IMG/VR virus record: IMGVR_UViG_3300009034_000001
Span: 177,415 to 241,414 of that record
DNA: 64,000 nt
Strand: one strand, 5' to 3'
The notes beneath the pieces were generated by a model. It was not told where the DNA came from. It saw only the letters and a program-made list of their open reading frames with translations, and ran no database searches. Shown piece by piece: positions 24,012 to 46,516 of this stretch; position 1 is the first letter of the stretch; the number at the start of each line of letters is the position of its first letter. The translations under genes and the position numbers were made by a program.

Positions 24012-24022
24012 TTAACCACCCC

Positions 24023-29006: not shown

Positions 29007-29150
29007 CTCCTAAGTACTAATCATCAGGCGTAAAACCTTTACAGCCTTTACAGCCTTTACTGCTTGTACTGCTATCGCAAATCAAAAATGCTATAAACAT
29101 CACCAAACCAAAGAAAATTGAGAGTACAATTTCCATAACGTCGCCCCCAC

Positions 29151-29498
29151 TTAGCCCGACAATATTTTAGTAGCAACCGCTTTTAGTGCCCCTTTGTTAG
29201 GAAACAAAAGCTCATCCCAGGTGGATAACGATCTGCCTTTATATCGATATTCATAACATTGACCCTCAGTGCCTTTCAAATCCCTAGGTTGTGATAGTAC
29301 ATCCCATAACGGACAGTAATCACAATGACAAGAGTCTATTCCAAGAAGAGAGCCGGGTGGGTTATATATGTCGATATTGGGATAGCGCTTCGTTGATGCA
29401 CGGCACAATGCACAACCGCAGCCAAAAAAGGATTTATGTTGATCGATATTACGATACACTAACTGAAGTATTTTGTCCTTAGTCCACTTCCTTGGCAT
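29151..29498 (-). CDS. Family A paralog 7
   Basis: CALC...CDYCPLW...C..YRYKG...NKGALKAV. Confidence 0.85.
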   Translation of the reverse strand: MPRKWTKDKILQLVYRNIDQHKSFFGCGCALCRASTKRYPNIDIYNPPGSLLGIDSCHCDYCPLWDVLSQPRDLKGTEGQCYEYRYKGRSLSTWDELLFPNKGALKAVATKILSG

Positions 29499-29514
29499 TT
29501 AAACTTTCACCTCC

Positions 29515-29832
29515 TTAACTATCCTTCTTTGTTAAGTTGTTAACTAACGCAAGCAATAATGCTCGTAGTGCAGGTTTATTGTTACGTAATTTAGAATCCA
29601 AACTATGCAAGATTTTGCCTTTATATTTAATATTTGCGCAATCCGACATATATGGAATCGACTGTTTTAAATACCTCCAAAGTGGACAGACGTCACACTG
29701 GGAGTGGTCAAAACCAGCATGTTCCTCGGCTTCAACACAAAGTAGGCAAGTAAACGGATCTCCATATAAAGAGCCATCGCGTTCAATGTTACGCTCGACG
29801 CACCTTATAATAGATTTCTTCGATAGCTTCAT
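29515..29832 (-). CDS. Family A paralog 8
   Basis: KKSIIRCVERNIE...CLLC...CDVCPLW...C.NIKYKG...NKPALRALL. Confidence 0.85.
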   Translation of the reverse strand: MKLSKKSIIRCVERNIERDGSLYGDPFTCLLCVEAEEHAGFDHSQCDVCPLWRYLKQSIPYMSDCANIKYKGKILHSLDSKLRNNKPALRALLLALVNNLTKKDS

Positions 29833-29847
29833 TTTTTTTAGCCTCCT

Positions 29848-30171
29848 TTAGCTAAAGTGATTAATAAGTCCCCTTAACAACGCCAGTAACGCCGGCTTAT
29901 TTCCCCTTAGCTTTTTATTATGAACCCAAAGCGGGTTACCTTTATATCGTATAATAGAACAGCCGCTTTCAGCATCCGTACGACAGCCCAATTCCGGCAT
30001 TGTCACATAATCCCACAACGGACAGAAATTACACTTATAAGCAGAAAGATGTCCACGCCTGTTAAAAGCAATACTACAAAGTAAACAGTTAAAACGACTA
30101 AACAAAGAACCATGCATTTTAATGTTTCGCTCGACGAAATTTATAAGGTTTTCCTTTGAAATCTTATGCAT
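29848..30171 (-). CDS. Family A paralog 9
   Basis: CLLC...CNFCPLW...C..IRYKG...GNKPALLALL. Confidence 0.85.
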   Translation of the reverse strand: MHKISKENLINFVERNIKMHGSLFSRFNCLLCSIAFNRRGHLSAYKCNFCPLWDYVTMPELGCRTDAESGCSIIRYKGNPLWVHNKKLRGNKPALLALLRGLINHFS

Positions 30172-30588
30172 CTTCTAACTCCTTCCCAAATATAGCATTC
30201 CAAACTATTCAAGTCCTTTGAACCATCTTTCGTCAAATTGCACGGGGCGGCCCGTCCCTAGACTTAAACGCTCTAAATTTAAGTCGGCGAACCTTGACTC
30301 CTTTGCCCAAGTATTAGAACACCGATAACTTCGCGAACAAACCGGAGATGATCCGCTCGTGTCAGGTACCAATAAGTAGGAAAGGAACCTAGTTCAAAGA
30401 GAGTCTCACCGTCACCCCGTAAATCCACAATACTACAATGTTCCGGAGAGGCGTTGACCAAATGTGTTACTGAGTTCCATGTGTGATGTGGCCACCCGGA
30501 TGACCTATTAAAGCCTCTCTGATAAGACTCAAGTATAATATCAAGAGCACATACCATCTCTGAATATAACATCTTCTGTAACTGTACC

Positions 30589-31017
30589 TTATTTAACTGT
30601 ATCTGCAACCTGTTTCTCTATAAAAATCTGTTTACATACAGTAACACTATGACTTTCCATGCCACTAAATGTGCTGAAACATTGATTCCCAACACAAACT
30701 GGTTCTTTTACCCTTACCCTCCAAATCTCGTGATTATGGTCGTATCCAAAACGTCCTTTCTGTTTTAGTCGAGCCTTTACATCCTTCAAACTATGGTAAA
30801 CATGAAAACCTCGAAGATAACACGTACGACCTTCATCTCTTAAGGATATTGTTTCCTTACGAAAATTACCAATGTAATCTTTTTCATGTAACCATTGGTG
30901 TCTAGGCCTAACTTTACTTCTGTTTATAAATTCGCCATAAAGTTTACCGTTTATCCGAGCAAAAACCTTATAACCTTGCTTCACTGGCCGTTTATTTGTC
31001 ACTACAGATAAACACAT
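30589..31017 (-). CDS. Family B paralog 5
   Basis: MCLS...GYKVF...GKLYGE...RP..WLHEKDY...GFHVYH...VTVCKQIFI. Confidence 0.85.
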   Translation of the reverse strand: MCLSVVTNKRPVKQGYKVFARINGKLYGEFINRSKVRPRHQWLHEKDYIGNFRKETISLRDEGRTCYLRGFHVYHSLKDVKARLKQKGRFGYDHNHEIWRVRVKEPVCVGNQCFSTFSGMESHSVTVCKQIFIEKQVADTVK

Positions 31018-31050
31018 TTAATGCCCTCCTTTAACTGTGCCTATTACAAG

Positions 31051-31494
31051 CTACTTCTTATATACAGGAATTCGTTCTTCTATAAAAATCTGCTTACAAA
31101 CCGTAACATTTTGCCTCACCATTTCACCACCCATATGAAGGCGATAGTTTTGAACCCCATTACAAGTAGGCTCTTTTATCTTAACCTTCCATATTTCGTA
31201 ACTACCTCTACGCGCTTCGTAGGGGTAAGTCATTTTCCGACGAAGTCGAGCCTTGGCATCCTTCAAACTATGGTATACATGAAAACCCATAAGGTACTTA
31301 TGAAAACCTCTATCTCTTAAGAACATTATATCCTCCCAATAGCTATCTCTGTAGTCTTTTTCATGTAACCACCGGCGTTTTGGTCTAACCTGTTCGTTAC
31401 TTACATATTCTCCATACAGTTTGCCATGAAGCTGAAAGAAGATCTTGTAACCTTGTTTCACCGATCTTCTATTTATTACGGTTGATAAACACAT
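31051..31494 (-). CDS. Family B paralog 6 (tandem duplicate of paralog 5)
   Basis: Same motifs; identical 26-nt RBS/start junction at about 31008-31032 and 31484-31509. Confidence 0.85.
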   Translation of the reverse strand: MCLSTVINRRSVKQGYKIFFQLHGKLYGEYVSNEQVRPKRRWLHEKDYRDSYWEDIMFLRDRGFHKYLMGFHVYHSLKDAKARLRRKMTYPYEARRGSYEIWKVKIKEPTCNGVQNYRLHMGGEMVRQNVTVCKQIFIEERIPVYKK

Positions 31495-32259
31495 TTAATG
31501 CCCTCCTTTGCTTTTCAGGAAATCAACTGCGACCTTACCTCTACCTTTTAGTGCTCGCAATTGATGTACTTGTCAATAGACCTCTTTTTCTGATTTCTCT
31601 CAGTACCTCTATCTTTTTCGCTTGCAATTTTTTGATTTCCAAACGTGTATCCGTACCATCTAGTTTGCCATATCCCCAACCAGCCGCAAAATCTGCAAGC
31701 TTAAAGTCAATCTGATTAATTAACCTTTCATAATAATCGACTAGTTCCTCATCAGAAAGATCTGTGTGTTTTACATTAAGAAATCCTGCTGTTTCAGGCG
31801 TAATGCAACCAAACACAACAAAAACCGTCCAGAAAAGGAAATAGACTACTAAAGCAGCCTTTATTATTTTTAGCGCCATGACTTTCCTCCCATTATGTTA
31901 AATGAATATAAAAAGATTTACTTTAATTAGTTAACCTGCTCTAATTTAACACTCATTTTTAATAAAGCTTGAATTAAAGTAGCTGCAGTAGTACCCTCTA
32001 AACAGCCGCCTTTTACCTCCTCAACATGTAAACTTCCTGCTGCAACACGGAATTTCCTGCCCTGTAACCAACTAAAACGAATGGCATCTACTTCAGACAT
32101 AGTATCCAATTTTGTAATTCGCTCATGGTAAGGTAAAGTCCTAAAAACTATCTCAACCACCTCATCCTTTGTCATTAACATTCCTATTCACCCCCTTTAA
32201 GTGTGAGTATCACAAATTAACATGAAAAGATATAAACGTGTCTATACTTCTTTTTATGC

Positions 32260-32787
32260 TTAAAATGTTCCTTGCGTCTTTGGAAGCCTATCATATAGCT
32301 TTGCTTTCAGTTCTACTACTTGTTGTTTCAGGTTTTTGATAGTTCTCTCATTGCCGCCTTCTTCACAAATTAATTCATGCTGAAGACGATAACATTTAGC
32401 CTTCAAAGAAGATATTTCCTTCCGCAAGCACTCAACATTAGTAGCATCACAAACCAATGCACGTCTAAGCTGATTTCGACTTTTGATCTCTTTCAACAGT
32501 CTGAACCTGAGCTTTATGATTGTGTTTCTTTGGTATTCTACAGTATATTCCTGGTCGTTCCTTTCTACGCAGGTAGATTTACGCCGAAGTCTATAACATT
32601 CATCCTTCAAAGAAGATATTTCCTTCTTCAAACGTCCAACATTAGCAACATCACCGACTTGTTTTAAAGTGACAATAACGCGTTGAATACTACTAATGTC
32701 CCAATCTCGAACAACGCCACCGTACTCAAGTTTTCTTGCTAACCTTTTTAGTATTTCAATCTGGTCACATATAGTTGCTGCATACAT
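32260..32787 (-). CDS. Coiled-coil protein with an internal repeat
   Basis: LKKEISSLKDECYRL and LRKEISSLKAKCYRL; repeat also visible at DNA level. Confidence 0.7.
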   Translation of the reverse strand: MYAATICDQIEILKRLARKLEYGGVVRDWDISSIQRVIVTLKQVGDVANVGRLKKEISSLKDECYRLRRKSTCVERNDQEYTVEYQRNTIIKLRFRLLKEIKSRNQLRRALVCDATNVECLRKEISSLKAKCYRLQHELICEEGGNERTIKNLKQQVVELKAKLYDRLPKTQGTF

Positions 32788-34410
32788 AATAAGCTACCTC
32801 CTTCTAATATTCTTATGATTTCTCTGTTTTGTTACCTTTAATGTCTATCCTCGTCTTCAAAAGCTTCCTTATAATTCCGGTCTGCTTCGTCAATCACCTC
32901 ATGTGCCATGGTATTCGGTTTTGAGATTCTCCCTCCCGTAATATGCATATATACTTTGCTTACTTCTCCCATTACCATGCTGTAATCGTGAAGCTCTCGT
33001 TTAACCAAGTCAACATCAAGATTGCCATCCTTTTTGCAAACGAGGTCTCGCCAGAAATTTTCAAACGTTTTTTCATATTCTTCCATAATTATACCCCCAG
33101 AATTATTTTTACAATTCCAAGATTTGTAGCCTATTTCGCAAAGGCTTCCAACTGGCACATAAACTCGCCTATCTTGACTTCCACATCTTTTAAATGGGCT
33201 GCAAAGACTCGTAGCTTTTCAACATCGGAAGCAGGTTCAATGCCTCTAATCGCAAGTTTGTCTGCTACTCGTTCTAACAGATCAATTCGTTCTCTTAGAT
33301 TTGCTAACATGTCACGTTACCTCCCTAATACAATTAATACATGGGCCATCAGGAATCAAAGTAAACTCCTCCCGATATTCGCAATCATCTTTATCCCATT
33401 GGCACATGTATATGGTCTTCTTACGATGTTCCTTTACATTTAAAGTTTCATGAACATCTATTCCAGCAACTGCAACCATATACTTGCAGGTTTCAACTAA
33501 AGACCTTCTACATCTTGCCACTTTTGTTACTTTTTCCATTAAATTACACCTTTCTCTTTATAAGCTCTCATCTATAACTTCCCCTGTTTCATCATCTGTA
33601 ATCCTACCATTCCAATCTCTTACAAACTTTGCTCTAAGTTTTTCACGAAGAGATAACTCTTCTATTGCCTCTTGTTTGGTAGGAGCCTTTACCCGAAGAA
33701 ACTCTACAATAGTTCTTGTGAAGTTAAAAGTTGGCATTTTATTCCCTCCCCTTGTTTAATGTGAATGCTCTCTGTACTTAGAAAACTCGACAAAAAACGC
33801 TCTAAAATTATCATCGGAAAGGCCATCGAGCAGCTTAATAATTACCTTAAGCATATCTCTTATGTTAATGGAGATTAATCCGGGGGGAACCTTTTTAACC
33901 AACACATTATAGCAATACTGATGGACCTCTTCCATTATTTCTTGAATGGTAGCATCGGCCTCAAACGTTGAGCCATAATCTTCATTTTCCAACAAAGCAA
34001 GTATTCTTCCTCTTACCTTCATTGGTAGAACGTAGCACATCTCTCCCACCCCCTTAAGAAGCTGTTGGCATCAGCAAGCCGGTCAACTCCATGTAGCATT
34101 TATCACACAAAAGAATTTCCCAGACTCCTTCGTAAAAGACGATTACTACCGTTGCCTTATTTACATTACAAGCAACACAGTTATATCGCCCGTTTGATTT
34201 AACTATCTTTATCACTTGCGCGCTCCCTTAACTTATTCTTTATCGATTATATCGAAAGAAGCGGGTTCTGTCATAACAGCAAGCGGCACAGTATCCCAAT
34301 CTTTGACTTTTGGTGATGCAACACGATGAAAATCGAGAAGAAACTGTTGTGCTTCGTGATTCAAATCATGAAAGTAAATCTCCACATCATTTGATAAAGT
34401 TATCTTCATG

Positions 34411-34734
34411 TTATTTCTTGGCCCCCTTCGAATAGAAATTTATTAAACCTCTTAAAAACGCTCGTAGCGCAGGTTTATTTCCTTCCAACCTACTTTCAAT
34501 AGTAAACACAGCTTCTCCCTTGTATTTCAGGTGGCTACAAGCGGCTTCCAAACCGCAAAACTTTGGTTTTGGTAAATAATCCCATAATGGACAGTACTTA
34601 CATGTAAAATATTCCGTGGGAGACGTTCTCTTGTCAGCCTCAATACAAAGTTTACAGCTATGTAAACCTCCACTGAATGAGCCATATTTCTCGATGTTAT
34701 TTTTTATAAACTGAATAATTGTTGACTTCTTCAT
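34411..34734 (-). CDS. Family A paralog 10
   Basis: Family motifs; first of a 7-gene tandem array. Confidence 0.9.
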   Translation of the reverse strand: MKKSTIIQFIKNNIEKYGSFSGGLHSCKLCIEADKRTSPTEYFTCKYCPLWDYLPKPKFCGLEAACSHLKYKGEAVFTIESRLEGNKPALRAFLRGLINFYSKGAKK

Positions 34735-35063
34735 TTATGTCTTCCTCCTTTATTTTTATACTCGTTGATGAGTCCATTTAACATTGCACGTAGTGCAGGT
34801 TTATTTCCTGTCAACCTGGAATCCAACACAACCAACTTTTCTCCTTTATATTTAAGATTAAAACATTCGGCCCCATAATGTTCAAACTCTGGTTTTGGCG
34901 CGTAATCCCATAGTGGACAAACTTGACATACATCACGGACATCACGAAACAGCAACTTCGCTTCAGCTTCTCTACAAAATATGCAACCACGACGACCGCC
35001 CCAAAGGGAACCACTTTTCTCTATATTACCTCTTAAAAACCGAATAATGGTTGACTTCCTCAT
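34731..35063 (-). CDS. Family A paralog 11
   Basis: Family motifs. Confidence 0.9.
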   Translation of the reverse strand: MRKSTIIRFLRGNIEKSGSLWGGRRGCIFCREAEAKLLFRDVRDVCQVCPLWDYAPKPEFEHYGAECFNLKYKGEKLVVLDSRLTGNKPALRAMLNGLINEYKNKGGRHK

Positions 35064-35067
35064 TTAT

Positions 35068-35382
35068 TTAATCCTCCTTGTCAAAATGTTTAATTAGTCC
35101 ATTTAATAAAGCTCGAAGTGCCGGTTTGTTTCCTTCCAACCTCATTTCAATCTCAAACAACGCTTTTCCATTATACTTAAGATTTGCACAGCTAGCTTGA
35201 TAACTACGACACTTTGGTTTTGGTATATAATCCCATAGTGGACAGACCTTGCATGCAAGCCAATCCGGTGGGGACATCCTCTTTTGAGCCTCGGCACAAA
35301 GTTTACAGTTAGATAAATTACAAAATGAGCCATATTTCTCAATATTATTTTTTACAAACCGAATAATGGTTGACTTTCTCAT
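35068..35382 (-). CDS. Family A paralog 12
   Basis: Family motifs. Confidence 0.9.
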   Translation of the reverse strand: MRKSTIIRFVKNNIEKYGSFCNLSNCKLCAEAQKRMSPPDWLACKVCPLWDYIPKPKCRSYQASCANLKYNGKALFEIEMRLEGNKPALRALLNGLIKHFDKED

Positions 35383-35386
35383 TTAT

Positions 35387-35719
35387 TTAATCCTCCTTGT
35401 CAAAATGCTTAATTAGTCCATTTAATAAAGCTCGAAGTGCCGGTTTGTTTCCACGCAACTTGAAATCAATCGTATTCAATGTTTCCCCTTTATAACTAAT
35501 CCACCCACAGCTATATTCATTAGTTGGTATGTAATCCCACAGAGGACAAGCAACACACCTACACCTGCCATAATGGTAGGTATTATTAGGATCAAACCTT
35601 TTATCAGCCTCCCAACAAAGCATGCATCCACAGCTCAATTCAAATGCTTTCCTGCAGAATAACGAGCCATACCTCTCAATATTATTCTTAACAAATCGAA
35701 TAATGGTTGACTTCCTCAT
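35387..35719 (-). CDS. Family A paralog 13
   Basis: Family motifs. Confidence 0.9.
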   Translation of the reverse strand: MRKSTIIRFVKNNIERYGSLFCRKAFELSCGCMLCWEADKRFDPNNTYHYGRCRCVACPLWDYIPTNEYSCGWISYKGETLNTIDFKLRGNKPALRALLNGLIKHFDKED

Positions 35720-35723
35720 TTAT

Positions 35724-36035
35724 TTAATCCTCCTTGCCAAAGTGATTAACTAACCCATTTAACAATGCTCGAAGTGCTGGTTTGTTTCCAGCCAACTTGT
35801 TTTCCCAAACTAGTAACGGTTCTCCTTTATAACTAATCCACCCGCAGGCAGGCGTAATATCACACTTTGGTTTTGATATGAAATCCCATAGTGAACAAAC
35901 TTCACAGATATTACAAAACGCGGGCTTCCTCAATTTAGCTTCTGCGCAAAGTATACAATCACTCAATCCACCAAAGAGGGAACCACGACTTTCGATGTTT
36001 CCTTTTACATACCGAATAATTGTTGCCTCCTTCAT
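35724..36035 (-). CDS. Family A paralog 14
   Basis: Family motifs. Confidence 0.9.
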   Translation of the reverse strand: MKEATIIRYVKGNIESRGSLFGGLSDCILCAEAKLRKPAFCNICEVCSLWDFISKPKCDITPACGWISYKGEPLLVWENKLAGNKPALRALLNGLVNHFGKED

Positions 36036-36352
36036 TATTTTCTCCCTTTACTAGCCAAATTGACCAATCCATTCAACACCGCGCGTAATGCTGGTTTGTT
36101 TCCTTCCAATCTCATATCCAACACGCACAATCTTTCGCCTTTGTATTTAATCTTGCCACATGGGGATTCAAAACCTTCATACTTTGGTTTTGGAAAATAA
36201 TCCCATAATGAACATGCATCACAGGAATTCCAAAATAAAGCTTTCCGCTTTTTTGCTTCGTTACAAAGTACGCAACCAACTGTGCCACCGAAGAGAGAGC
36301 CATAACTCTCGATGTTTTCTTTCACACATAGAATAATTGTTGATTTTTTCAT
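36035..36352 (-). CDS. Family A paralog 15
   Basis: Family motifs. Confidence 0.9.
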   Translation of the reverse strand: MKKSTIILCVKENIESYGSLFGGTVGCVLCNEAKKRKALFWNSCDACSLWDYFPKPKYEGFESPCGKIKYKGERLCVLDMRLEGNKPALRAVLNGLVNLASKGRK

Positions 36353-36684
36353 CTACTAAGTCCTCCTTTATTAAACGAGTTGACAACCCCATTTAACAAC
36401 GCACGCAGTGCGGGTTTGTTTCCTTTGAGAGTGTCACTCCAATAAGCTAGCCTCATCCCTTTATACAATATATCCTCGCAGTAAGGACTTATATTACCTA
36501 TCAAAACAGGGTCACTTATATAATCCCACAGGGGACAGAAACTGCACTTTGGTGTCAGTCCCGAGGTTTTTGCACGGCGCGCTGAAGCTACCAAACAAAT
36601 TTTACAAATAGACGCGAGCCCGTATAAAGAGCCATGTGTATTGATGTTTTTCTCAACACACCTTATAATTGATTTCAGGTTCAT
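36349..36684 (-). CDS. Family A paralog 16
   Basis: Family motifs. Confidence 0.9.
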   Translation of the reverse strand: MNLKSIIRCVEKNINTHGSLYGLASICKICLVASARRAKTSGLTPKCSFCPLWDYISDPVLIGNISPYCEDILYKGMRLAYWSDTLKGNKPALRALLNGVVNSFNKGGLSR

Positions 36685-36898
36685 TTACTTCCACCTCCTC
36701 TTTAAATACTACATGTGTTTCCACAGCTCCACAGCATCCTTCATAATTGTAGGTTTCCTCGAAAGAAGCATCAGTGGAATATTTATTATAGCTGCAATCA
36801 CAACAAGTATCGGGAAGAAGATAGGAGTGATTGTCCACTTAATACTCTGTTTCACAATTATTTCGCCCCCTTCTTAATTTACCATCTTTTTAAACACA

Positions 36899-37129
36899 TC
36901 AATGCCCTATACGAAAAGTCTTTCTTAAAATAATTGAGACTCTCACCAATAAACTTAGATGTCTAGCCTTCCATTCAGCACTTAGTTTCCTCCAACTACA
37001 ATGGAGACAAAAGTCTTCTGGATAACCTACCCGAATAGTGCCAGAACAGACTGGACAAGCTCTAAATAACTTATATATCTCGACCTTGCCTTCTTTAGCT
37101 ACCAACGTGGACCCTCTACGTTTGGCCAA
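36899..37129 (-). CDS. Zn-ribbon protein (paralog of 48601-48807)
   Basis: CPVCSG....GYPEDFCLHCSW. Confidence 0.65.
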   Translation of the reverse strand: MAKRRGSTLVAKEGKVEIYKLFRACPVCSGTIRVGYPEDFCLHCSWRKLSAEWKARHLSLLVRVSIILRKTFRIGH

Positions 37130-38071
37130 AGTAATGCCACACCTGAGCAGTTAGTTCATCAATTGCACGCTGCCGTTCTTCAGCTCTCCGTTTCCAGAAA
37201 GATACCTGCTTTTCATGGTGGCAATTCAACCATTCCAAATCCTGTTCTAAATCAATAACCTCATCGATCCACTTATCTATTACTTTCTTGACTGACATTA
37301 ATCCTCCTCCTTAAGCTCCAGGCACCCCTAGTAGTTTACAAAGAAAGACAACTACAAGAATACCTGCAGACAGACCTACCCAAAAGCTAAATGGATCCAC
37401 TTTATGGCTTAACGGCTTCTCACAATGCTCACAAAATCTCATCTCAAACCTCCTAAAGATCCGGCGTCCAATCTTCAACCGTTGTTTTAAGTTTCCAACA
37501 CAGTTTAAAAACTATCAACCGGCATTTTGGCAAACTTAACTTTGGATAACGCTCATGAATCCTCTTCGATAGCTCTTCTACAATTTGCTCATCTGAATAA
37601 CCAGCTTCTTTCAAGCTATCAATATCACGTTCAATATACACATTTCCATAGCTCATCTCAAACCTCCCGTTTTTTAGCCTTTAGAACCATCATGGGCGGC
37701 CCTAAAGGAAACATATACATCTGTTTGAACTTTTCAAGTTCGCAATTTAACCAGTCGATTTCCCTCCAAAGTTTCTCAACTTCCAGCCGCTTCTCATTCT
37801 CTATTCTCAAATTGCTAGGCGGACAAAAGATACACGCCATAAGATACCTCCTTTATTTCTTCCCATCGCCCCAACGTATTCCATTCTTGCATCTTTCTAG
37901 TAAATCATTAATACTCTGTAGCTCAGAATCAATTTCTTGAATCTGACTAATAATTGCCTTAGCAACAACTATATCGAATTGTAACACAATGGTAGCTAGG
38001 TGTTTCTCTTTTAGTTCTTTAGCACTTAATATTATACCATCTATCAATTCAGCTAGCGCTTTTTCTTTCAT

Positions 38072-38275
38072 TTAATAGCCTCCACGCTCTAAAGCATCAG
38101 CACATTCATTGCACTGATAACCTTTGGCTACATCCAATGGAGTAAGTCGATTTGGTTTTCCACAATTAGGACACGGATGTTTCCTTGGATTCTTCTTTGT
38201 AGCTGCACGAAGAGCACTTCCTCCGCCCGGATCCGCAAAGCCAACCCCGTCAATGAGCATCTCTTCATCATGCAT
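38072..38275 (-). CDS. Conserved phage Zn-ribbon protein
   Basis: FADPGG.SALRAA...PCPNCG..NRLT..D...GYQC..CAD. Confidence 0.6.
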   Translation of the reverse strand: MHDEEMLIDGVGFADPGGGSALRAATKKNPRKHPCPNCGKPNRLTPLDVAKGYQCNECADALERGGY

Positions 38276-40146
38276 CTCTTTGATACCTCCTTAAAAGAAT
38301 TTAATTAAGAACCAATAAGTGCCCATCCCAGAACCAAGAAAAATGTTGCCACCAATACACAAATAATACATATACATATTTTCTCACGTCTATTGTATAG
38401 AGGCTCCCTACTAACTCCCGGGAACCTTACATCACCAGCCTCTTCATGCTTCCTTAACTTATGTAGAACGACATTTATCTTTTCAGTAGCTTCCTCATCT
38501 ATTTGCATAAATCTACAATACGCAGACTCAATCCGCTTTGCACCTTGTACCACACGGTTAATAAGTTCAATCTGTTCACAATTAAGTTCTCCCTTCTTAG
38601 CTAACCTGGCGACTGTAACTGCGGCAAACTTATTAGCTAACTTAGTTAATCTCGGATTATGCATATCTTATCACTCTCCTCGAATTGCGTTTCGGATTTT
38701 TCTGATATACAATTGTTTAAGGTCTTTGTAAAGCTGCCTTTTATTTTTTCCGGAAAGCAAGACCTTCCCGCTTCCAACTCCAAAACACTCCATCCGTGCT
38801 TCTCGCTCAGAGTTGACTTTCGAACTTACTCTGATAAGTGAACCATATTCAACAACATAGTACTTCTTTGCCATCTTAAATCACCTCCCAAACTAAATAT
38901 CTTTAATAGTATGTACCTTTTTCGGAAAGATTCTTCCCAGTCCACTATCGTACGTTTTGTATAAAGCGTATCCAAAAATGCCTCCAATGATTATGCACAC
39001 CACGCTATACAGTATGGCCGCCAAGAAAGCAATCCACTGAACCAACAGCTGGTCAGGGTATTTCAACAACAAATTTTTATACACCTGGGAAACAACCCAA
39101 ATGCCATATAAAGAGCCTGTCCAACAAAGTATGCAAGTTATCAAACCTAGCACCTTACAAGATACTTTTTGGAGTAAATTCATCCTTTTATCCCTCCTTT
39201 ATCTTTAGCAATTACTCATTAAACTTATTAAGCTGACGCGCAATATTCTCAAGTTGAGTAGCAATAGCAGCTAATCCAGTTAGAAGCGCTCGCGCAGTTG
39301 TTAGCAGAACCAACTTGTCATTGGTCGGCCCTGTTAGCTTTAGTTTCGACATATCTTCAAAAGACAAAGATTTTTCGATAATATCGTCGAGAGTCTTAAT
39401 CTGTGTTTCAACCTTCTTGTCCATTGGTTTCTCCTTGTTACAAAAAATTAGGTACAGTATAAACACACCATATAAACATTCCTACTAACTACTTGTGCTT
39501 CCGTCTGCGAAAAAACTTTCTGCGCTTGCCTTTTGTTTTCCAAACAGGCATTACATATTCCTCCACCAACCAATTTCTTCAGAGCATTTCTTTAGTCCAA
39601 TGTACATCCAGAAATGTGATACGAGCAACTTAAAAATAATGAAAAGTATTAGAAATAGTTCAATCATATCAATTCCTCCTTATCGTTTCTTTGGAAATCT
39701 CATACCGACGTCATCAAGCCTACAAGCACATACATCACCAGACAATCCTAACTCACACATAGCACCGTCAACAGCATTATAAAATGGCACGCCTCTAATG
39801 TCTGTAACCTCATAAATGCCAATTACTTCAAAAGGGTCATCCGCTGTCGGATACCTATTAGTAAACCAACAGCACTTATTAACTTTAATCGAGTCAGGGT
39901 TAGGATCAGCTTCCCTATCTTCTACTAAAAATATTCTCATAACTTTCTACCTCCTTCATGTTGAATTAAACATAATCTTTCGGCCCGTAAATAATCGAGT
40001 AATCACTAAAGCTGTGTACGAATTGTGAAACCATGTAACCCAATAATGCACAAATGGCTACCACCAAAATAAGTCTAAATACTAACCCGGATTTCCCTTT
40101 TAGTTTAAGCCAAAATAAACGCATCATTTCACACCTCACACTCTTT

Positions 40147-40455
40147 CTAACCAAAGTAATTATCTAATCCCTTTAGTAGTGCTCGTAGTGCTGGTCTATT
40201 TCCAGCTAGCCTAGAGTTCAAGACATGAAGATTCTTACCTTTGTATTTAATCTGATCACATCCACAAATATACGTTGGCCACTCTGGTCGAGGCATGTGG
40301 TCCCACAGGGGACACCACGCACAACTTGAGCCACAACTTGTGCCTTTCCTAGCCATGGCAACATCACACAATGCACAATCGAGCGGATGCCCATACAAAG
40401 AGCCATGGTTCGAGATGTTATTCCTTAAAAAACGAATAATCGCTGTCTTATTCAT
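40147..40455 (-). CDS. Family A paralog 17
   Basis: Family motifs; first of a 5-gene tandem array. Confidence 0.9.
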   Translation of the reverse strand: MNKTAIIRFLRNNISNHGSLYGHPLDCALCDVAMARKGTSCGSSCAWCPLWDHMPRPEWPTYICGCDQIKYKGKNLHVLNSRLAGNRPALRALLKGLDNYFG

Positions 40456-40781
40456 TTCTTTATTTCCTCCTTACCAAAACGCGTAATTAATCCATTCAAG
40501 AGTGCACGTAGTGCTGGTCTATTTCCAACTAGAATACAATCAATCGCCAACAAAGACCTTCCCTTATATACAATCCCAGAGCAGCTATAATTACTAGTAG
40601 GTATGTAATCCCACAACGGACAATCCATACAAGTTCCCTCATAGACATCAGGGTCAAAGTCGGGGTTAAACCGCTTATCGGCCTCTTTACAAATCACACA
40701 ACCCGCCATTTCCTTACTGAACAACGAGCCATACTCTTCAATATTCCTCTTGACACATCTTATAATGGTTGTCTTCTTCAT
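40452..40781 (-). CDS. Family A paralog 18
   Basis: Family motifs. Confidence 0.9.
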   Translation of the reverse strand: MKKTTIIRCVKRNIEEYGSLFSKEMAGCVICKEADKRFNPDFDPDVYEGTCMDCPLWDYIPTSNYSCSGIVYKGRSLLAIDCILVGNRPALRALLNGLITRFGKEEIKK

Positions 40782-41098
40782 CTTTTTATTTCCTCCTTGC
40801 CAAAGTAATTAACTAATCCATTTAGCAGCGCTCGTAGTGCTGGTTTGTTTCCACGCAATCTATGCTCAAATTTGTACAGAGTTGTTCCTTTATGCCAAAT
40901 ATCTGCACAATCGGCTCTGTGACCCGGTGGTTTTGGCATGATATCCCATAATTGACAGTTATTACATTCAGATGTACCCAGTGAAGTTTTCCGCTTTTCT
41001 GCTTCCTTACACAAAACACAATTAAACGGGTCGCCATATAAAGAGCCATACGTCTCAATATTACGTTTTACAAGGCTAATAATAACTGACTTCTTCAT
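40778..41098 (-). CDS. Family A paralog 19
   Basis: Family motifs. Confidence 0.9.
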   Translation of the reverse strand: MKKSVIISLVKRNIETYGSLYGDPFNCVLCKEAEKRKTSLGTSECNNCQLWDIMPKPPGHRADCADIWHKGTTLYKFEHRLRGNKPALRALLNGLVNYFGKEEIKR

Positions 41099-41424
41099 TT
41101 ATTAAGTCCTCCTTTTTCAAACAAGTTGATAACCCCATTTAACAATGCTCGTAGTGCTGGTTTGTTTCCTTCCAGCTCGGAATCAATCGAAATCAACGGT
41201 TTCCCTTTATACCTAATCCACCCACAGCTATTATCACTAGTAGATATGTAATCCCACAGAGGACAAGCAACACACCTACACCTGCCATAATGGTGGGAAT
41301 TATTAGGGTTAAATCTTTTACCTGCCACATCACAAAGTGCACAGGTTGTAAGTTTATCACTAAATAACGAGCCATACTTCTCGATATTCCTCTTGACACA
41401 TCTTATAATGACTGACTTCTTCAT
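41095..41424 (-). CDS. Family A paralog 20
   Basis: Family motifs. Confidence 0.9.
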   Translation of the reverse strand: MKKSVIIRCVKRNIEKYGSLFSDKLTTCALCDVAGKRFNPNNSHHYGRCRCVACPLWDYISTSDNSCGWIRYKGKPLISIDSELEGNKPALRALLNGVINLFEKGGLNK

Positions 41425-41759
41425 TTGTTTAATTCTCCTTTATTAAAAGCGTTGATAAGTCCATTTAATAACGCTCGAAGAGCTGGTTTATTGCCATTCA
41501 AGAAGTAATCAGAAGCAAAAAGTTTTGCTCCTTTGTAGAGAATGTCAGAACATTCTGAATACCTACCAGATGGTCTTGTTATGTGATTCCACAATGGACA
41601 GAGGTCACATTCAAGTACCATTTCGAAAACCTTCCAATCCGTTTGAGAAGCACGCTTTTGTGCTCCCTTACAAAGAATGCAATCATCTGGAATTCCGTAT
41701 AACGACCCATACTTCTCAATATTCCTTTTGATGCATCTTATAATAGCTGAAACCTTCAT
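41421..41759 (-). CDS. Family A paralog 21
   Basis: Family motifs. Confidence 0.9.
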   Translation of the reverse strand: MKVSAIIRCIKRNIEKYGSLYGIPDDCILCKGAQKRASQTDWKVFEMVLECDLCPLWNHITRPSGRYSECSDILYKGAKLFASDYFLNGNKPALRALLNGLINAFNKGELNK

Positions 41760-42484: not shown

Positions 42485-42805
42485 TTACCGGGGGTCACCC
42501 GATACCGAAACTTTCATCCAAACTTCGCCGTTGAAGAGGTCAGAAACAAAATGTCTACCATTGCATTTATTATCAAGATAACATTCAGTAGTCTTCCCGT
42601 CAGAACCCGAAGCCAGAAAGATGTCACTACACATGGTAAATTCTTCCTTGAAGACTTTGTTGCCTCTCCCCCCAGGAACAATATAACGTCTAACCGCAAA
42701 ATCCTTTTTTAGCTTGTGCCTCTCATCATAGAGAACTCTAATCCAACGATTGAATTTAAAATGTTCTCTTTCGTACCTTTCCTTTAATGTAGATTGATCA
42801 CACAT
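42485..42805 (-). CDS. Family C paralog 1
   Basis: MCD..TLKERY...W.RV..DERHKLK...VRRY...F....DIFL...KTTECY...FVSDLFNGEVW. Confidence 0.88.
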   Translation of the reverse strand: MCDQSTLKERYEREHFKFNRWIRVLYDERHKLKKDFAVRRYIVPGGRGNKVFKEEFTMCSDIFLASGSDGKTTECYLDNKCNGRHFVSDLFNGEVWMKVSVSGDPR

Positions 42806-42849
42806 CTTTTGTGTCCTCCTTCTAAATAAGTTTAATCAAACCAAATTAT

Positions 42850-43176
42850 TTAACAATCTGCATCCTCACAAATCCAAACTTCGCCATTAAAGAGAAGACT
42901 AACAAAACCGGTCCGACATGTCATAACGGCATCATGATACAAATAATGCTCGGTTGTCTTCCCGGCGCTCTCAGTCAGAAAAATATCCGAATCCATCCAA
43001 AATTGGTACAAACTGACTTTGTCATTCCCCACGGGAGGGATAACATAACGCCTAACAAACACGCCAGTTTTTAGTTTGTGCCTCTCATCGTAAGGGACTC
43101 TAATCCAACGAGGAACGCATTTATCTTTAATCTGTTCCCTTTCATACCTTTCCTTTAATGTAGATTGATCGCACAT
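42850..43176 (-). CDS. Family C paralog 2
   Basis: Family motifs. Confidence 0.88.
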   Translation of the reverse strand: MCDQSTLKERYEREQIKDKCVPRWIRVPYDERHKLKTGVFVRRYVIPPVGNDKVSLYQFWMDSDIFLTESAGKTTEHYLYHDAVMTCRTGFVSLLFNGEVWICEDADC

Positions 43177-43206
43177 CTTTTGTATCCTCCCTCTAAATAA
43201 GTTTAA

Positions 43207-43548
43207 TCAAACCTGAGACCAAATACGCATCCAAACTTCGCCACGGAAGAGGTCTCCAACATAACCCCTTTTTCCAATCGATGCTTGTCCAGGCAAAATT
43301 TCATCATGGTACATATAAGCAGTTGTTGTCCTCCCGTTGTAACCCTTTGTAAGAAAAATGTCAGAATCCATCCAAAAGTCATGTACTTCAACATGGTCAC
43401 TCCCAGTAGGGACAAAATAGCGCCTAACCCTAGTACCCGATTTTAGCTTGTGTCGCTCATCAAAGGGAACCAGAACCCAACTAGGAACGCATTTATCTTT
43501 ATTCTGTTCCCTTTCATGTCTTTCCTTTAATGAAAGTTTAATACACAT
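43207..43548 (-). CDS. Family C paralog 3
   Basis: Family motifs. Confidence 0.88.
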   Translation of the reverse strand: MCIKLSLKERHEREQNKDKCVPSWVLVPFDERHKLKSGTRVRRYFVPTGSDHVEVHDFWMDSDIFLTKGYNGRTTTAYMYHDEILPGQASIGKRGYVGDLFRGEVWMRIWSQV

Positions 43549-43592
43549 CGTTTATACCTCCTTTCGGTGGTTAATAAAACCAAGTTATTTAT

Positions 43593-43997
43593 TCAGCAAC
43601 CCGTGAGCACCAAAATCCAAACTTCATCCATAAACAGATCCTGAACAAAACCACTCCGTCCCCCTATATTTTTCGAGTCCTTAACAAAACCCTTCCGTTC
43701 CCCCATCTTACTCGAGGGTACTGGCCCAGGCGGAGGATGATACAAATAACACTCCGTAGTCTTCCCGTTGTAACCCTCCGTCAGAAAAATGTCCGAATCA
43801 AGCCAAAATTCTTGCATGGAGACTTTGCCACTATTTCCCACCTTAACGTAGCGCCTAACAAACATACCAGCTTTTAGCTGGTGTCTCCGTTCAAAGGGAA
43901 CCATAATCCAACGAGGAACGCACGTTTTCTGTTGCTTTTCATATCTTTCCTTTAATGTAACTTTAAAAAAATCAGTAGCTGCTGGAAAATCGAACAT
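43593..43997 (-). CDS. Family C paralog 4 (with Pro/Gly-rich insertion)
   Basis: Family motifs plus HPPPGPVPSSKMGERKG insert. Confidence 0.88.
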   Translation of the reverse strand: MFDFPAATDFFKVTLKERYEKQQKTCVPRWIMVPFERRHQLKAGMFVRRYVKVGNSGKVSMQEFWLDSDIFLTEGYNGKTTECYLYHPPPGPVPSSKMGERKGFVKDSKNIGGRSGFVQDLFMDEVWILVLTGC

Positions 43998-44711
43998 TAC
44001 TTATTCCCCCCTTTCATTACTTTAAAAAAGACTGGATATGGCTCTTCTAATATGATAAAGAAAACCTTTATCATTTGGTAGTGTATAAAGCATAAGCCCA
44101 TTTGCAATCTTGCGAACAAAGTACTCTTCGCCTTTATAGTGAAAACAATAACACGTGTTGAGTGCCATATCATCGGTGTTGACTTCTACTACGCCCTGTC
44201 GTATTCCAATCGGCCATTGCGTTTCCATCTATATCCGCCCCCTATTTAATATGATTTATTACACATTCTACTGTCATAACAGCAGCAAATGCCGTTATGA
44301 CTGAAATAACCACATAATAAAGTATACCCATTAGTTTCTTCATTTCAAACTCCGTTGTTTATTCTGATTTACTCAAAAGGGAATACATCTGCCAACAGTG
44401 AACTTACATTCACCACTAAAGACTCTTCCGAGTCAGAACCCTTGTTATATCCCAGCCAGTCACCGCCCCTATCGCTATCCATCCACCACTGACCATCACC
44501 AAGTTCGTTCTCGACTTGTTTTTTCCAACTTTTTAACAATTCTCTTAATTTCTTTTCCATCTTTACCCTCTCTTCATCTTTTTTGGCTTTATCCAAAACA
44601 TCTTTTTGCTTATCATATAATTCCTTGCAACGCTTCTTAAAAGACCTTTTGCCATCTTCCCTCAAAAGGTCTATCAAAGTGATTTCTCCCATGATTTCAT
44701 CTCCTTCTATC

Positions 44712-44945
44712 TTACGTTACAATAAGTCCAAATACGACCGCAATGCTCGCTCCGAACCATGTGCACCACAAATCGTCCCACTCAGGCGTTCCATAACCTA
44801 ACATATCTAACAATTCCTTTGCCACGCCAAATGCGAATCCGGCAAAATAAAGTGGCGACCATGCCATTCCTAACAAAGATAGCATACAACCCACTATAAG
44901 ATGCGCTATTTTATCTCTTCTCAATGTAATATCCCAATGACCCAT
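44712..44945 (-). CDS. Small membrane protein (VanZ/DUF2279-like DK..H...KE..D motif)
   Basis: DKIAH...hydrophobic helices...KELLD..G.G...DL. Confidence 0.5.
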   Translation of the reverse strand: MGHWDITLRRDKIAHLIVGCMLSLLGMAWSPLYFAGFAFGVAKELLDMLGYGTPEWDDLWCTWFGASIAVVFGLIVT

Positions 44946-45028
44946 ATAAAATCCCCCATATTTTTTTTGCCCGTCCCAAATTAAATAATACAGTTAAAGA
45001 TATGTCGTTTACCTCCTTTTCGTACTCC

Positions 45029-45174
45029 GAGGGAATCAAACCCTCATCCGCTATTGTCATACTAGGGCTCACGGCTACTAGAAACATCATGAGTCATTAC
45101 ACGACACAGCACAATGTTACCGTGAGCCCGGCACCCCCTCGATCTCCGCCTTTCCGCAGATGCCGCAAGGCGGA
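45029..45174 (-). ncRNA. Candidate structured RNA element
   Basis: GC-rich intergenic stretch with three stems: TCCGCCTT/AAGGCGGA, GGGCTCACGG/CCGTGAGCCC and GAGGG-TTTGATT-CCCTC. Confidence 0.35.
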
Positions 45175-45244
45175 AGCCTACTCAAACACAGATATAGCTG
45201 ACACGGCCAGTCCAAATTCAAACACCTCCATATAAACCGCACTG

Positions 45245-45562
45245 CTACTCGTACACGTACATCATCCATACTTCGCAGTTAAAGAGGTCACTAACATAAT
45301 ACTTGGTGACATCACCTTTTCGGTTATAACATTCTTCAGTTACCGAGTTATAGTTTGGAGCCAAATAGATGTCAGTACCCATAGTAAATTCTTTCATATA
45401 GACACAAGTACTTCCTGCTGTAAGGATAAAAGCTCTGACTACCTTATCCTTCTTCAATACATGTCTTTGGTCATAAGGCACATGACACCAACGGTCATAG
45501 TGTGGTACCTGCTCTCTGAGCCATCGATCTCTTAAACATGGTTTATCATCCATTTCTTTCAC
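45245..45562 (-). CDS. Family C paralog 5
   Basis: Family motifs (FTMGTDIYL, YVSDLFNCEVW). Confidence 0.88.
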   Translation of the reverse strand: MKEMDDKPCLRDRWLREQVPHYDRWCHVPYDQRHVLKKDKVVRAFILTAGSTCVYMKEFTMGTDIYLAPNYNSVTEECYNRKGDVTKYYVSDLFNCEVWMMYVYE

Positions 45563-45586
45563 CTCTTTTAAATATACTCCGTACTG

Positions 45587-45892
45587 TTACGCGTACATCC
45601 GCCATACCTCTCCGTTAAAAAGGTCACTAACAAAATATTCGATATCACAACCTCTTTTCTTATAACATTCCGTAGTTAACTTGGAAAAGCCTCCTGACGA
45701 TAAATAGATGTCAGTACCCATAGTAAATTCTTCCATGTGAACACAATCTCTTCCAAATGGAACGGCATAACATCTAATCCTAATGCCCTTCTTTAATAAA
45801 TGTCTCTGGTCGTGACGCACTTGAGTCCAATAACAATCGACAGGTGACTGTTCCTTCATGTATCTATCTCTTAAAGTAGGTTCGCCGCACAA
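45587..45892 (-). CDS. Family C paralog 6
   Basis: Family motifs. Confidence 0.88.
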   Translation of the reverse strand: MCGEPTLRDRYMKEQSPVDCYWTQVRHDQRHLLKKGIRIRCYAVPFGRDCVHMEEFTMGTDIYLSSGGFSKLTTECYKKRGCDIEYFVSDLFNGEVWRMYA

Positions 45893-45916
45893 TTTCTTTC
45901 ACCTCCTTTATTCTCA

Positions 45917-46222
45917 CTAAATATCTTTACTTTTTATCCACACCTCTCCGTTAAACAGATCACTAACAAAGCGTACGTCACTGTAGCCGTATTCCCTATA
46001 GTATTGAATGGTTTTTAAGTTAGTGCCCTTTCCCAAATAGATATCTGTGGCCATAGTGAATTCTTCCACGATGACTTCTTGAGTTCCAATTGGTATAATG
46101 TAACGCCTTACCCTAGTGCCACTCTTTAATAAATGTCTTTTGTTATAGGGTACACATTTCCAGTTGTCATTATCGTATGTCTCCCTGAGATGCCGATCCC
46201 TTAAACAAGGTTTGTCACACAT
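45917..46222 (-). CDS. Family C paralog 7
   Basis: Family motifs. Confidence 0.88.
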   Translation of the reverse strand: MCDKPCLRDRHLRETYDNDNWKCVPYNKRHLLKSGTRVRRYIIPIGTQEVIVEEFTMATDIYLGKGTNLKTIQYYREYGYSDVRFVSDLFNGEVWIKSKDI

Positions 46223-46273
46223 ATCTTTTCACCCCCTTTTAGGTCTGATTGTCGAACCAATCACTATTAATCA

Positions 46274-46343
46274 ATACCGGAACACCCGCCACCGTATCGG
46301 CGCGCCACGGCATTTAACCGCCGAATAACAAGTGTTCCGGTAT
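46274..46343. repeat. 12-bp perfect inverted repeat enclosing a GC-rich sub-hairpin
   Basis: ataccggaacac (46274-46285) and gtgttccggtat (46332-46343). Confidence 0.85.
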
Positions 46344-46351
46344 ATCTTTCT

Positions 46352-46516
46352 TTAACCAAATAATGGATGTTCCGATATATCTTTCTTTTCGCCGTCCCCA
46401 ATGGTTCCTACGGATCCCCAAAATATCTTACCCGCAAGGTGAAAACCCAACCCAAATGCAAACCCAAGTACCACGGTAAGTCCAAACAAAACCGCCAATT
46501 CATGTACATCAAACAT
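46352..46516 (-). CDS. Small membrane protein (54 aa, below the ORF-track cutoff)
   Basis: GGAGG RBS; MFDVHELAVLFGLTVVLGFAFGLGFHLAGKIFWG... Confidence 0.6.
   Translation of the reverse strand: MFDVHELAVLFGLTVVLGFAFGLGFHLAGKIFWGSVGTIGDGEKKDISEHPLFG

What the first reader, a model, noticed from the sequence alone, without database searches (positions are those of the whole stretch)
42485..46222. Family C: seven paralogs of a second unknown protein in two tandem arrays
Seen: a 4-gene and a 3-gene array with consensus MCD..TL+.R...W..V....RH.LK....R.Y.......F....DI(F/Y)L....TT.CY.....(F/Y)VSDLF.GEVW. Variable segments lie between conserved strands, and one copy has a Pro-rich insert. There is no similarity to family A. 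Inference: a beta-rich scaffold forming an independent diversified repertoire.
Basis: partly seen in the sequence, partly recalled or inferred. Interest (0 to 1): 0.62.

Follow-up and report, generated by a model that had tools for sequence, protein, structure and literature searches.

The report
Seven-copy orphan β-barrel family, jumbo phage

Summary
Seven co-oriented minus-strand genes of 101-134 aa lie in a 4-gene array (42485-43997) and a 3-gene array (45245-46222). Each has its own Shine-Dalgarno site. They are 36-62% identical, with 23 invariant columns. These are the only copies in the 241,415-bp viral genome, an uncultured jumbo phage from sediment whose PolA is about 26% identical to the nearest cultured phage.

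An exhaustive HMM search of 1.84 billion representatives found only two outside relatives. One is a single-copy 121-aa gene in an unrelated myovirus-like contig. The other is the C-terminal domain of a 360-aa protein on a contig that also carries nuclease, ADP-ribosylglycohydrolase and type I R-M genes. Pfam, PHROGs, NCBIfam, PADLOC and PDB sequence searches gave nothing.

AlphaFold2 (pLDDT 86) predicts an N-terminal helix plus an SH3/Tudor-like barrel. The best structural match is Z 6.9, which is in the generic range.

The two arrays are separate clades (97/96 support). dN/dS is about 0.35 in secondary-structure elements and about 0.8 in coil. Three loops sit near 1. The copies are old and kept under selection, but positive selection is not shown.

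Most likely these are non-structural binding modules of the phage's accessory arm, acting in host takeover or counter-defence. That function is inferred, not shown. No expression data exist.

The parts
42485..42805 (-). C1, family C paralog, 106 aa (last gene of array 1)
   Evidence: Intact ORF with SD. Profile E 4e-42. 61% identical to C2.
42850..43176 (-). C2, family C paralog, 108 aa; the copy that was folded
   Evidence: AF2 model m5549171e2744, pLDDT 86.
43207..43548 (-). C3, family C paralog, 113 aa
43593..43997 (-). C4, family C paralog, 134 aa. It has an N-terminal extension and a ~20-aa insert in the loop before the C-terminal motif.
   Evidence: The insert is a Pro-rich piece plus a 39-nt internal tandem duplication at 43639-43716.
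45245..45553 (-). C5, family C paralog, 102 aa (ATG start at 45553)
   Evidence: Matches database protein P0004, 102 aa.
45587..45892 (-). C6, family C paralog, 101 aa, TTG start
   Evidence: SD AAGGAGGTGA lies 7 nt upstream of the TTG.
45917..46222 (-). C7, family C paralog, 101 aa (first gene of array 2 in the direction of transcription)
43998..45244 (-). 1.25-kb spacer between the arrays. It holds unrelated small ORFs (68 aa at 44022-44228, 107 aa at 44369-44692, 77-aa membrane protein at 44712-44945) and a 299-nt ORF-free stretch (44946-45244).
   Evidence: No family C remnant by tblastn or nhmmer. The 107-aa ORF is not a member: hhalign probability 5%. The fold z-score of the 299-nt stretch is -1.6 and it has no Rfam match.
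46240..46345 (-). Strong RNA/DNA hairpin immediately upstream of C7
   Evidence: The 46223-46360 stretch folds at dG -50 kcal/mol with z -4.85, and 0 of 200 shuffles fold as well. Its role as terminator or regulator is not tested.
42486..42504 (-). Terminator-like stem-loop overlapping the C1 stop codon. A sigma-70-like promoter match follows at 42316-42288.
   Evidence: Consensus scan only. Counts of such sites equal the shuffled expectation, so this is weak.

Best explanation
SHOWN.
- Family C is a phage-specific family of about 100-aa soluble proteins. They are hydrophilic (GRAVY -0.40 to -0.76); no signal-peptide or transmembrane predictor was run.
- They are predicted to fold as a conserved N-terminal helix packed on an SH3/Tudor-like beta-barrel.
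- The family grew by local tandem duplication into two arrays, each a separate clade, with unit periods of 336-372 nt.
- There are later gene-conversion-like patches and one internal 39-nt duplication.
- The copies are old: dS is 0.7-1.0 within arrays and saturated between them.
- All seven are intact and translatable.
- They are under purifying selection on the core, while three loops and the termini drift at about the neutral rate.
- They sit in a 64-kb arm of about 190 mostly tiny, same-strand genes of an uncultured 241-kb jumbo phage. The arm also holds a 20-member Cys-rich family, a sigma-70-type factor and a DMP19-like (DNA-mimic) protein.

INFERRED.
- The genes are read from polycistronic transcripts of this accessory arm.
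- They encode non-structural small binding modules that engage a host macromolecule, in host takeover or counter-defence.
- The conserved face (TL+ERY helix, RH.LK helix, SDI[FY]L, FVSDLFNGEVW) would provide a common function.
- The variable loops would let the paralogs cover different target variants.
For: Real genes:
- SD sites and intact frames.
- dN/dS 0.38-0.71 overall, 0.35 in secondary-structure elements and 0.79 in coil.
- A confident fold from only 9 sequences.

Local expansion:
- The array 1 | array 2 split has 97/96 support.
- A 92%-identical 88-nt patch is shared by C1 and C2.
- There are exactly seven copies in the genome.

Accessory context:
- 42 of 188 window genes belong to paralog families.
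- The arm encodes a sigma-70 r2+r4 protein and a DMP19-like protein.
- The replication and morphogenesis genes that were identified (PolA, Lon-like protease, prohead protease) lie elsewhere in the genome.

Mobility and a possible link to conflict systems:
- The only outside relatives are a single-copy gene in an unrelated GC-31% myovirus-like contig, and the C-terminal domain of a 360-aa protein.
- That 360-aa protein is flanked by Endonuclease_1, ADP-ribosylglycohydrolase, HTH_17 and HsdM/HsdS genes.

Fold class: SH3/Tudor-like barrels such as CarD, the UvrD C-terminal domain, TraI 634-710 and bL19 are typically protein- or nucleic-acid-binding adaptors.

Precedent: T4 overcomes toxIN by tandem amplification of the small inhibitor gene tifA (PMC9391042).
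Against: - There is no functional evidence of any kind.
- No RNA run holds the locus.
- No promoter signal rises above chance.
- Fold matches are below the noise mark: best Z 6.9, where unmatched models typically reach 7-8.
- No anti-defence or defence family matches.
- Loops at omega about 1 are what any small protein shows, so a 'specificity repertoire' is not demonstrated.
- The defence-island reading of the P0009 contig rests on precomputed Pfam neighbours only.
- The host is unknown.
Confidence: 0.4

Rival explanations
1. Nucleic-acid-binding regulators or chaperones. The barrel would work like Sm/Hfq, bL19, KOW or cold-shock-type domains and bind phage or host RNA or DNA. The invariant basic residues (Arg10, Arg29-His30, Lys33 and Arg39 in C1 numbering) would form the binding face.
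For: The structural neighbours include bL19 (Z 5.4-5.8), RimP C-domain (5.8), an Sm-like variant 2e12 (5.0), an Hfq-like protein 2qtx (4.4) and an LSm domain 4a54 (4.9). Five invariant basic residues lie in or next to the two conserved helices. Five of the seven copies have pI at or above 7.6.
Against: pI ranges from 5.9 to 9.2 and two copies are net acidic. No LSM, KOW or S1 Pfam match appears even at E up to 1. All the Z values are in the generic range. The self-association test gave no verdict.
Confidence: 0.2
2. Minor virion or assembly proteins, such as decoration, internal or ejected proteins. Paralogous sets of such proteins are known from large myoviruses of the phiKZ type (this comparison is from my own knowledge).
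For: Jumbo phages do carry paralog sets among virion proteins (own knowledge, not tested here). In its own phage, the relative P0008 lies about 5-8 kb from baseplate, tail-tube and sheath genes.
Against: In this genome the arrays lie in the small-gene arm, more than 100 kb from the prohead protease and the large structural-size ORFs. No PHROG structural family matches. The proteins are small, soluble and vary in charge.
Confidence: 0.1
3. Simple dosage amplification of one function, or decaying or spurious duplicates with no distinct roles.
For: The layout is tandem, and there are gene-conversion-like patches. The T4 tifA amplification is a precedent.
Against: The copies are only 36-62% identical, with dS 0.7 to saturated. 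Dosage amplifications are near-identical and unstable. All seven keep intact frames, SD sites and 23 invariant residues, with omega below 1, so they are not decaying.
Confidence: 0.07

Closest known systems
TraI relaxase (F/R1 plasmid), residues 634-710, part of the translocation-signal domain (PDB 5n8o, 9f0x, 4l0j)
   Same: This is the best structural match. Z is 6.9 with rmsd 2.4 Å over 74 aligned residues, covering model residues 22-108. It is a small SH3-like barrel used as an interaction module.
   Different: Sequence identity is 10%. Z is below the level (7-8) that unmatched models typically reach. In TraI the barrel is embedded in a 1,700-aa helicase/relaxase, whereas family C is free-standing. 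No sequence-level relationship was found.
CarD / TRCF (Mfd) RNAP-interacting domain and the UvrD C-terminal Tudor domain
   Same: Tudor/SH3-like barrel of similar size. Matches are CarD 4l5g at Z 5.6 (59 aligned, 2.6 Å), Mfd 6ac6 at Z 5.0 and UvrD 6yhz at Z 5.0. ESM-Atlas clusters carrying CarD_TRCF_RID score TM about 0.52. The same arm encodes a sigma factor, so redirecting RNAP is a conceivable theme.
   Different: The PF02559 model finds nothing in the phage genome at E up to 10, although it rings in 12 of 14 control genomes, 10 of them over the curated cut-off. Family C has an extra N-terminal helix and extra strands. RNAP binding was not tested.
DUF7699 (PF24766), an ESM-Atlas cluster partly from Uroviricota
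   Same: It is among the closest predicted-structure neighbours of similar length. TM is 0.57/0.55 with 79 residues aligned at 3.1 Å.
   Different: The PF24766 model gives no hit in the genome at E up to 10, and Pfam scans give none. The function of DUF7699 is itself unknown.
Tandem amplification of small counter-defence genes in large phages (T4 dmd-tifA, PMC9391042)
   Same: A small accessory gene is multiplied head-to-tail in a large lytic phage by recombination at short homologies. This gives a plausible origin and selective setting for the arrays.
   Different: The tifA arrays are fresh, identical repeats raised under laboratory selection, and they destabilise the genome. Family C copies are ancient, diverged and individually conserved. 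There is no sequence or fold relation to TifA, and no anti-defence activity is shown here.
The 20-member Cys-rich family in the same arm
   Same: Both have a gene size near 105 aa, lie on the same strand in the same arm, and are organised as tandem arrays.
   Different: The two are unrelated: hhalign probability is 0.2%. The Cys-rich family has five invariant cysteines, whereas family C has no invariant Cys.

Membership tests
Any curated protein family (Pfam-A, PHROGs, NCBIfam, PADLOC, PDB sequences) | Significant profile match | tested here: not met
   Pfam gave 0 families at E up to 1 for all 7 copies. PHROGs gave only single-member hits at E 0.0035 and 0.053. NCBIfam and PADLOC gave none. 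A PDB profile search gave 0 hits at E up to 10.
CarD_TRCF_RID (PF02559) | Match to the family HMM | tested here: not met
   No hit in the whole phage genome at E up to 10. The control rings in 12 of 14 genomes, 10 of them over the curated cut-off.
CarD_TRCF_RID (PF02559) | Tudor-like five-strand barrel superposable on CarD or Mfd RID | tested here: inconclusive
   Z is 5.0-5.6 with 59-64 residues aligned at 2.6-3.1 Å. This is below the Z 8 level at which a match stands out from common arrangements.
CarD_TRCF_RID (PF02559) | Binding to the RNA polymerase beta subunit | not testable with these tools
   The host and its RNAP are unknown, so no complex was attempted.
DUF7699 (PF24766) | Match to the family HMM | tested here: not met
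   No hit at E up to 10. There is only a TM 0.57 resemblance between predicted models.
Sm/LSm/Hfq ring-forming barrels | Sm1/Sm2 sequence motifs (Pfam LSM or Hfq match) | tested here: not met
   No Pfam match. Structural Z is only 4.4-5.0 to 2e12, 4a54 and 2qtx.
Sm/LSm/Hfq ring-forming barrels | Self-association into rings | tested here: inconclusive
   The homodimer prediction scored 0.26 against a mark of 0.42, which is 'no answer'. A heptamer exceeds the tool's chain limit.
Tandemly expanded accessory gene family of a large phage | Several intact paralogs in head-to-tail arrays, same strand, each translatable, under purifying selection | tested here: met

The most novel reading that the evidence does not exclude
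Family C is a previously unrecognised class of phage counter-defence or host-takeover binders built on an SH3/Tudor-like barrel. The seven paralogs would form a specificity repertoire, each neutralising a different variant of a host factor such as an immune protein or RNA polymerase. Bacteria would use the same module as the C-terminal recognition domain of a defence-island protein (P0009). A wilder variant is that the seven copies assemble into a hetero-oligomeric, Sm-like ring.
Probability: 0.15. Interest if true: 0.6.

Novelty: new member of a known kind. Interest (0 to 1): 0.33.

Why it matters
Jumbo phages devote large arms to tiny genes of unknown function. Tandemly expanded families are the most tractable entry points, because selection has plainly acted on them. 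Family C is close to an orphan: seven copies here and two remote relatives among about 15 billion proteins. It nevertheless gives a confident fold, so it is a clean candidate for a structure-plus-pull-down study once a host is known. If the paralogs bind distinct host targets, the family would show how a phage builds a binding repertoire by duplication. If they do not, it is one more lineage-specific family of dark matter.

Tried and rejected
Searches for relatives that found nothing:
- Phage GenBank by megablast and tblastn.
- IMG/VR pattern scan.
- A second word-index search with the broadened profile, which found no new members.

The P0009 fusion partner:
- Its N-terminal 250 residues have no relatives.
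- They gave no atlas hit.
- The single-sequence AF2 model was unusable, at pLDDT 32.

ESM-Atlas search with C2: the Atlas's own model of C2 is poor (pLDDT 0.41), so I disregarded its structural rows.

Self-association of C2: complex prediction with 2 copies scored 0.26 against a mark of 0.42. That is no verdict, and I do not use it for or against binding.

Decayed eighth copy in the 299-nt gap at 44946-45244: rejected. tblastn and nhmmer gave nothing.

The 107-aa ORF at 44369-44692 as a divergent member (it has a 'QWWMDSD' echo): rejected. hhalign probability is 5%.

Structured RNA in the gaps: no Rfam hits at gathering score or at E up to 1. The 299-nt gap has z -1.6.

Promoters and terminators: site counts equal the shuffled expectation.

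Expression: no RNA run holds the locus. Two sediment DNA runs hold only short, identical, low-depth contigs.

Copy-number variation: the second IMG/VR record (173 kb) is G000:1245-174352 at 100% identity and stops before the arm, so it is uninformative.

Tree with the two outside relatives as outgroups: unresolved because of long branches. The order of duplication is therefore not rooted.

Other notes:
- Only genetic code 11 was used.
- Read laying was given 4,701 bases.
Full report
OBSERVATION

The stated interval holds seven ORFs on the minus strand:
- C1 42485-42805
- C2 42850-43176
- C3 43207-43548
- C4 43593-43997
- C5 45245-45553
- C6 45587-45892
- C7 45917-46222

They form a 4-gene array and a 3-gene array separated by 1.25 kb. 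Gaps inside the arrays are only 24-44 nt. Each gene is preceded at 6-9 nt by a GGAGG-type Shine-Dalgarno site.

Pairwise identity is 36-62%.

Against the family profile the copies score E 1e-38 to 1e-44. A DNA profile finds exactly these seven places in the genome and nothing else.

Three corrections apply:
- C5 most likely starts at the ATG at 45553.
- C6 uses TTG as its start codon.
- The C4 'Pro-rich insert' also includes a 39-nt internal tandem duplication (43639-43716) that re-encodes the G-x-x-G-F-V-x-D segment.

WHERE IT LIES

The window is the last 64 kb of a 241,415-bp IMG/VR viral record that CheckV rates 98% complete.

A simple ORF model gives 470 genes, 424 of them on the minus strand, at 39.6% GC. 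The genome encodes several recognisable proteins:
- a family-A DNA polymerase fused to a UDG-like domain
- a LonB-like protease
- a prohead protease
- a GT2 glycosyltransferase

The polymerase is only about 26% identical to the nearest GenBank phage. This is a very divergent, uncultured jumbo phage.

Two sediment-metagenome DNA runs hold short, identical, low-depth contigs of the locus. No RNA run does. A second IMG/VR record equals genome positions 1245-174352 at 100% identity and stops 3 kb before the window, so it says nothing about the arm.

The arm holds about 188 mostly tiny genes, 42 of them in paralog families. The largest is a 20-member Cys-rich family. Family C is second, and a 6-member family is third.

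Recognisable genes in the arm:
- a sigma-70 r2+r4 protein
- a DMP19-like protein
- an isochorismatase
- a Rit1-like domain
- a ligase-type HhH+BRCT protein
- tRNA-Glu

RELATIVES

Family C has no match in Pfam, PHROGs, NCBIfam, PADLOC or PDB sequences. It also has none in GenBank phages or IMG/VR.

Any novelty claim rests on absence of relatives, so I ran the exhaustive HMM search of 1.84 billion representatives. It returned the phage's own copies plus two proteins.

P0008 (121 aa, E 1.8e-6):
- It is a single-copy gene among small genes next to T4-type baseplate, tube and sheath genes, on a GC-31% contig seen in several samples.
- In the parts I hold, that contig shares nothing else convincing with this phage; the only other hit is one weak match (E 7.7e-4).

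P0009 (360 aa, E 3.2e-5):
- It carries the domain at residues 256-347.
- It lies between Endonuclease_1 and ADP-ribosylglycohydrolase genes, on a 15.8-kb contig that also has HTH_17 and HsdM/HsdS.
- Its N-terminal 250 residues are themselves an orphan and could not be folded.

A second word-index search with the broadened profile added nothing.

Family C is unrelated to the 20-member family: hhalign probability is 0.2%.

STRUCTURE

AlphaFold2 on the 9-row alignment gives pLDDT 86 and pTM 0.76 for C2. The predicted elements, in order, are:
- helix 7-14
- strand 24-26
- helix 29-34
- strands 40-45, 55-61, 66-70, 73-81 and 87-91
- helix 92-95
- strand 99-103

Foldseek against the PDB and BFVD gives nothing at E up to 1e-3.

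Exhaustive VIA alignment and the re-ranked Foldseek list give a best Z of 6.5-6.9, to TraI residues 634-710 (74 residues, 2.4-2.9 Å). Next come RimP-C, bL19, CarD, Mfd-RID, UvrD-Tudor, chromo/Tudor barrels and Sm-like variants at Z 5-5.8. The tool's own calibration says unmatched models typically reach Z 7-8. So this places family C in the SH3/Tudor-like small-barrel class and no further.

ESM-Atlas neighbours (DUF7699, CarD_TRCF_RID clusters, DUF3310, an NCLDV cluster) have TM 0.50-0.59. The PF24766 and PF02559 models find nothing in the genome at E up to 10.

The proteins are hydrophilic (GRAVY -0.40 to -0.76). No signal-peptide or transmembrane predictor was run. pI ranges from 5.9 to 9.2.

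EVOLUTION

The two arrays are separate clades, with 97/96 support in the seven-taxon tree. The tree with outgroups is unresolved.

Nei-Gojobori estimates:
- dS is 0.7-1.0 and dN/dS is 0.38-0.71 within array 1.
- dN/dS is 0.44 for C5/C6.
- dS is saturated between the arrays.

Partitioning by predicted secondary structure avoids circularity. It gives omega 0.35 in helices and strands, and 0.79 in coil:
- The N-terminal helix is at 0.18.
- The strand-1/helix-2 block is at 0.33.
- The linker 15-23, the loops 46-54 and 82-86, and both termini are at about 1.0-1.4.
- The segment counts are small (5-16 codons). The data show constraint on the core and roughly neutral loops, not positive selection.

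Local patches of 90-96% nucleotide identity point to gene conversion or recent recombination within the arrays. One example is 88 nt covering the SD and 5' end of C1 and C2.

There is no decayed eighth copy in the 299-nt ORF-free gap downstream of array 2. The 107-aa ORF between the arrays is not a member.

EXPRESSION SIGNALS

Promoter-like and terminator-like sites are no more frequent than in shuffled sequence.

A very stable hairpin lies just upstream of C7 (dG -50 kcal/mol, z -4.85). A terminator-like stem overlaps the C1 stop, followed by a TTGAAG-17-TATATT match. These features are consistent with a transcription unit running from about 46.3 to about 42.4 kb, but that is inference.

INTERPRETATION

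Shown:
- The family is real and nearly orphan.
- It is tandemly expanded and long-maintained.
- It is predicted to be a small SH3/Tudor-like barrel with a conserved helical N-terminus.

Inferred, with confidence about 0.4: these are non-structural accessory proteins that act as binding modules in host takeover or counter-defence, with the paralogs diverging in their loops. The support is contextual:
- the accessory arm also holds a sigma factor and a DNA-mimic-like gene;
- the family occurs in an unrelated phage;
- the domain is fused in a protein on a contig rich in nuclease and R-M genes;
- the fold class is adaptor-like;
- tifA amplification in T4 is a precedent (PMC9391042).

Rivals:
- nucleic-acid-binding regulators (0.2)
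- minor virion proteins (0.1)
- dosage or decaying duplicates (0.07)

A homodimer prediction gave no verdict and is not used either way.

VERDICT

The thing is a new protein family of a known kind: a lineage-specific tandem paralog family in a jumbo-phage accessory arm. Its fold class is common and its function is unknown. Interest is modest.

Noticed in passing
window 22498-41759 (arrays at 34411-36684 and 40147-41759, plus scattered copies): A 20-member family of ~105-aa proteins with five invariant cysteines and a conserved C-terminal N[KR]PALRALLNGL motif. It is the largest paralog family in the genome, has no Pfam match, and is unrelated to family C.
   Followed up: partly
window 5064-5474, 7378-7764, 10133-10555, 23733-24011, 30589-31017, 31051-31494: A third paralog family of six members, 92-147 aa, scattered across the arm.
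   Followed up: no
window 20376-21110 (-): A phage-encoded sigma-70-family protein with regions 2 and 4. Its best partial NCBIfam similarities are to RpoH/RpoS-type factors, all far below the curated cut-offs.
   Followed up: partly
window 9660-10133 (-): A 157-aa protein matching Pfam DMP19-like (DNA-mimic protein family) at E 1.1e-7, above the curated cut-off. It is a candidate anti-restriction or regulator-decoy gene.
   Followed up: no
window 61342-61983 (-), 63437-64000 (-), 1700-2287 (-): An isochorismatase/nicotinamidase-like hydrolase (E 6e-44), a ligase-type HhH_2+BRCT protein that runs off the window end, and a weak Rit1-like domain. These are NAD- or nucleic-acid-related functions sitting among the tiny genes.
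   Followed up: no
window 46223-46388 (-): A very stable hairpin upstream of C7 (dG -50 kcal/mol, z -4.85). It is preceded by a 33-nt tandem repeat (46321-46353 and 46356-46388) that duplicates the 3' end of the upstream small membrane-protein gene.
   Followed up: partly
window 44946-45244: A 299-nt stretch without a credible ORF on the coding strand, richer in GC than its surroundings and containing a long internal hairpin. It has no Rfam match, and the overall fold z-score is only -1.6.
   Followed up: partly
window 43639-43716 (inside C4): A 39-nt internal tandem duplication, 79% identical, that creates part of the C4 insert. It shows that duplication operates below the gene level too.
   Followed up: yes
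position 2 of C1, C2, C3, C6 and C7: Cys immediately after the initiator Met in five of seven copies (MCD/MCI/MCG), with no signal peptide. No other cysteine is invariant. The significance is unknown.
   Followed up: no
G001 = IMGVR_UViG_3300009034_000002 (loci L021, L023, L024): An independent assembly of the same phage from another sample is 100% identical over genome positions 1245-174352 and breaks about 3 kb before the small-gene arm. The break could reflect population variation in the arm or only assembly limits.
   Followed up: partly
window 12170-12246 (-): tRNA-Glu (anticodon TTC), the only tRNA in the window.
   Followed up: no
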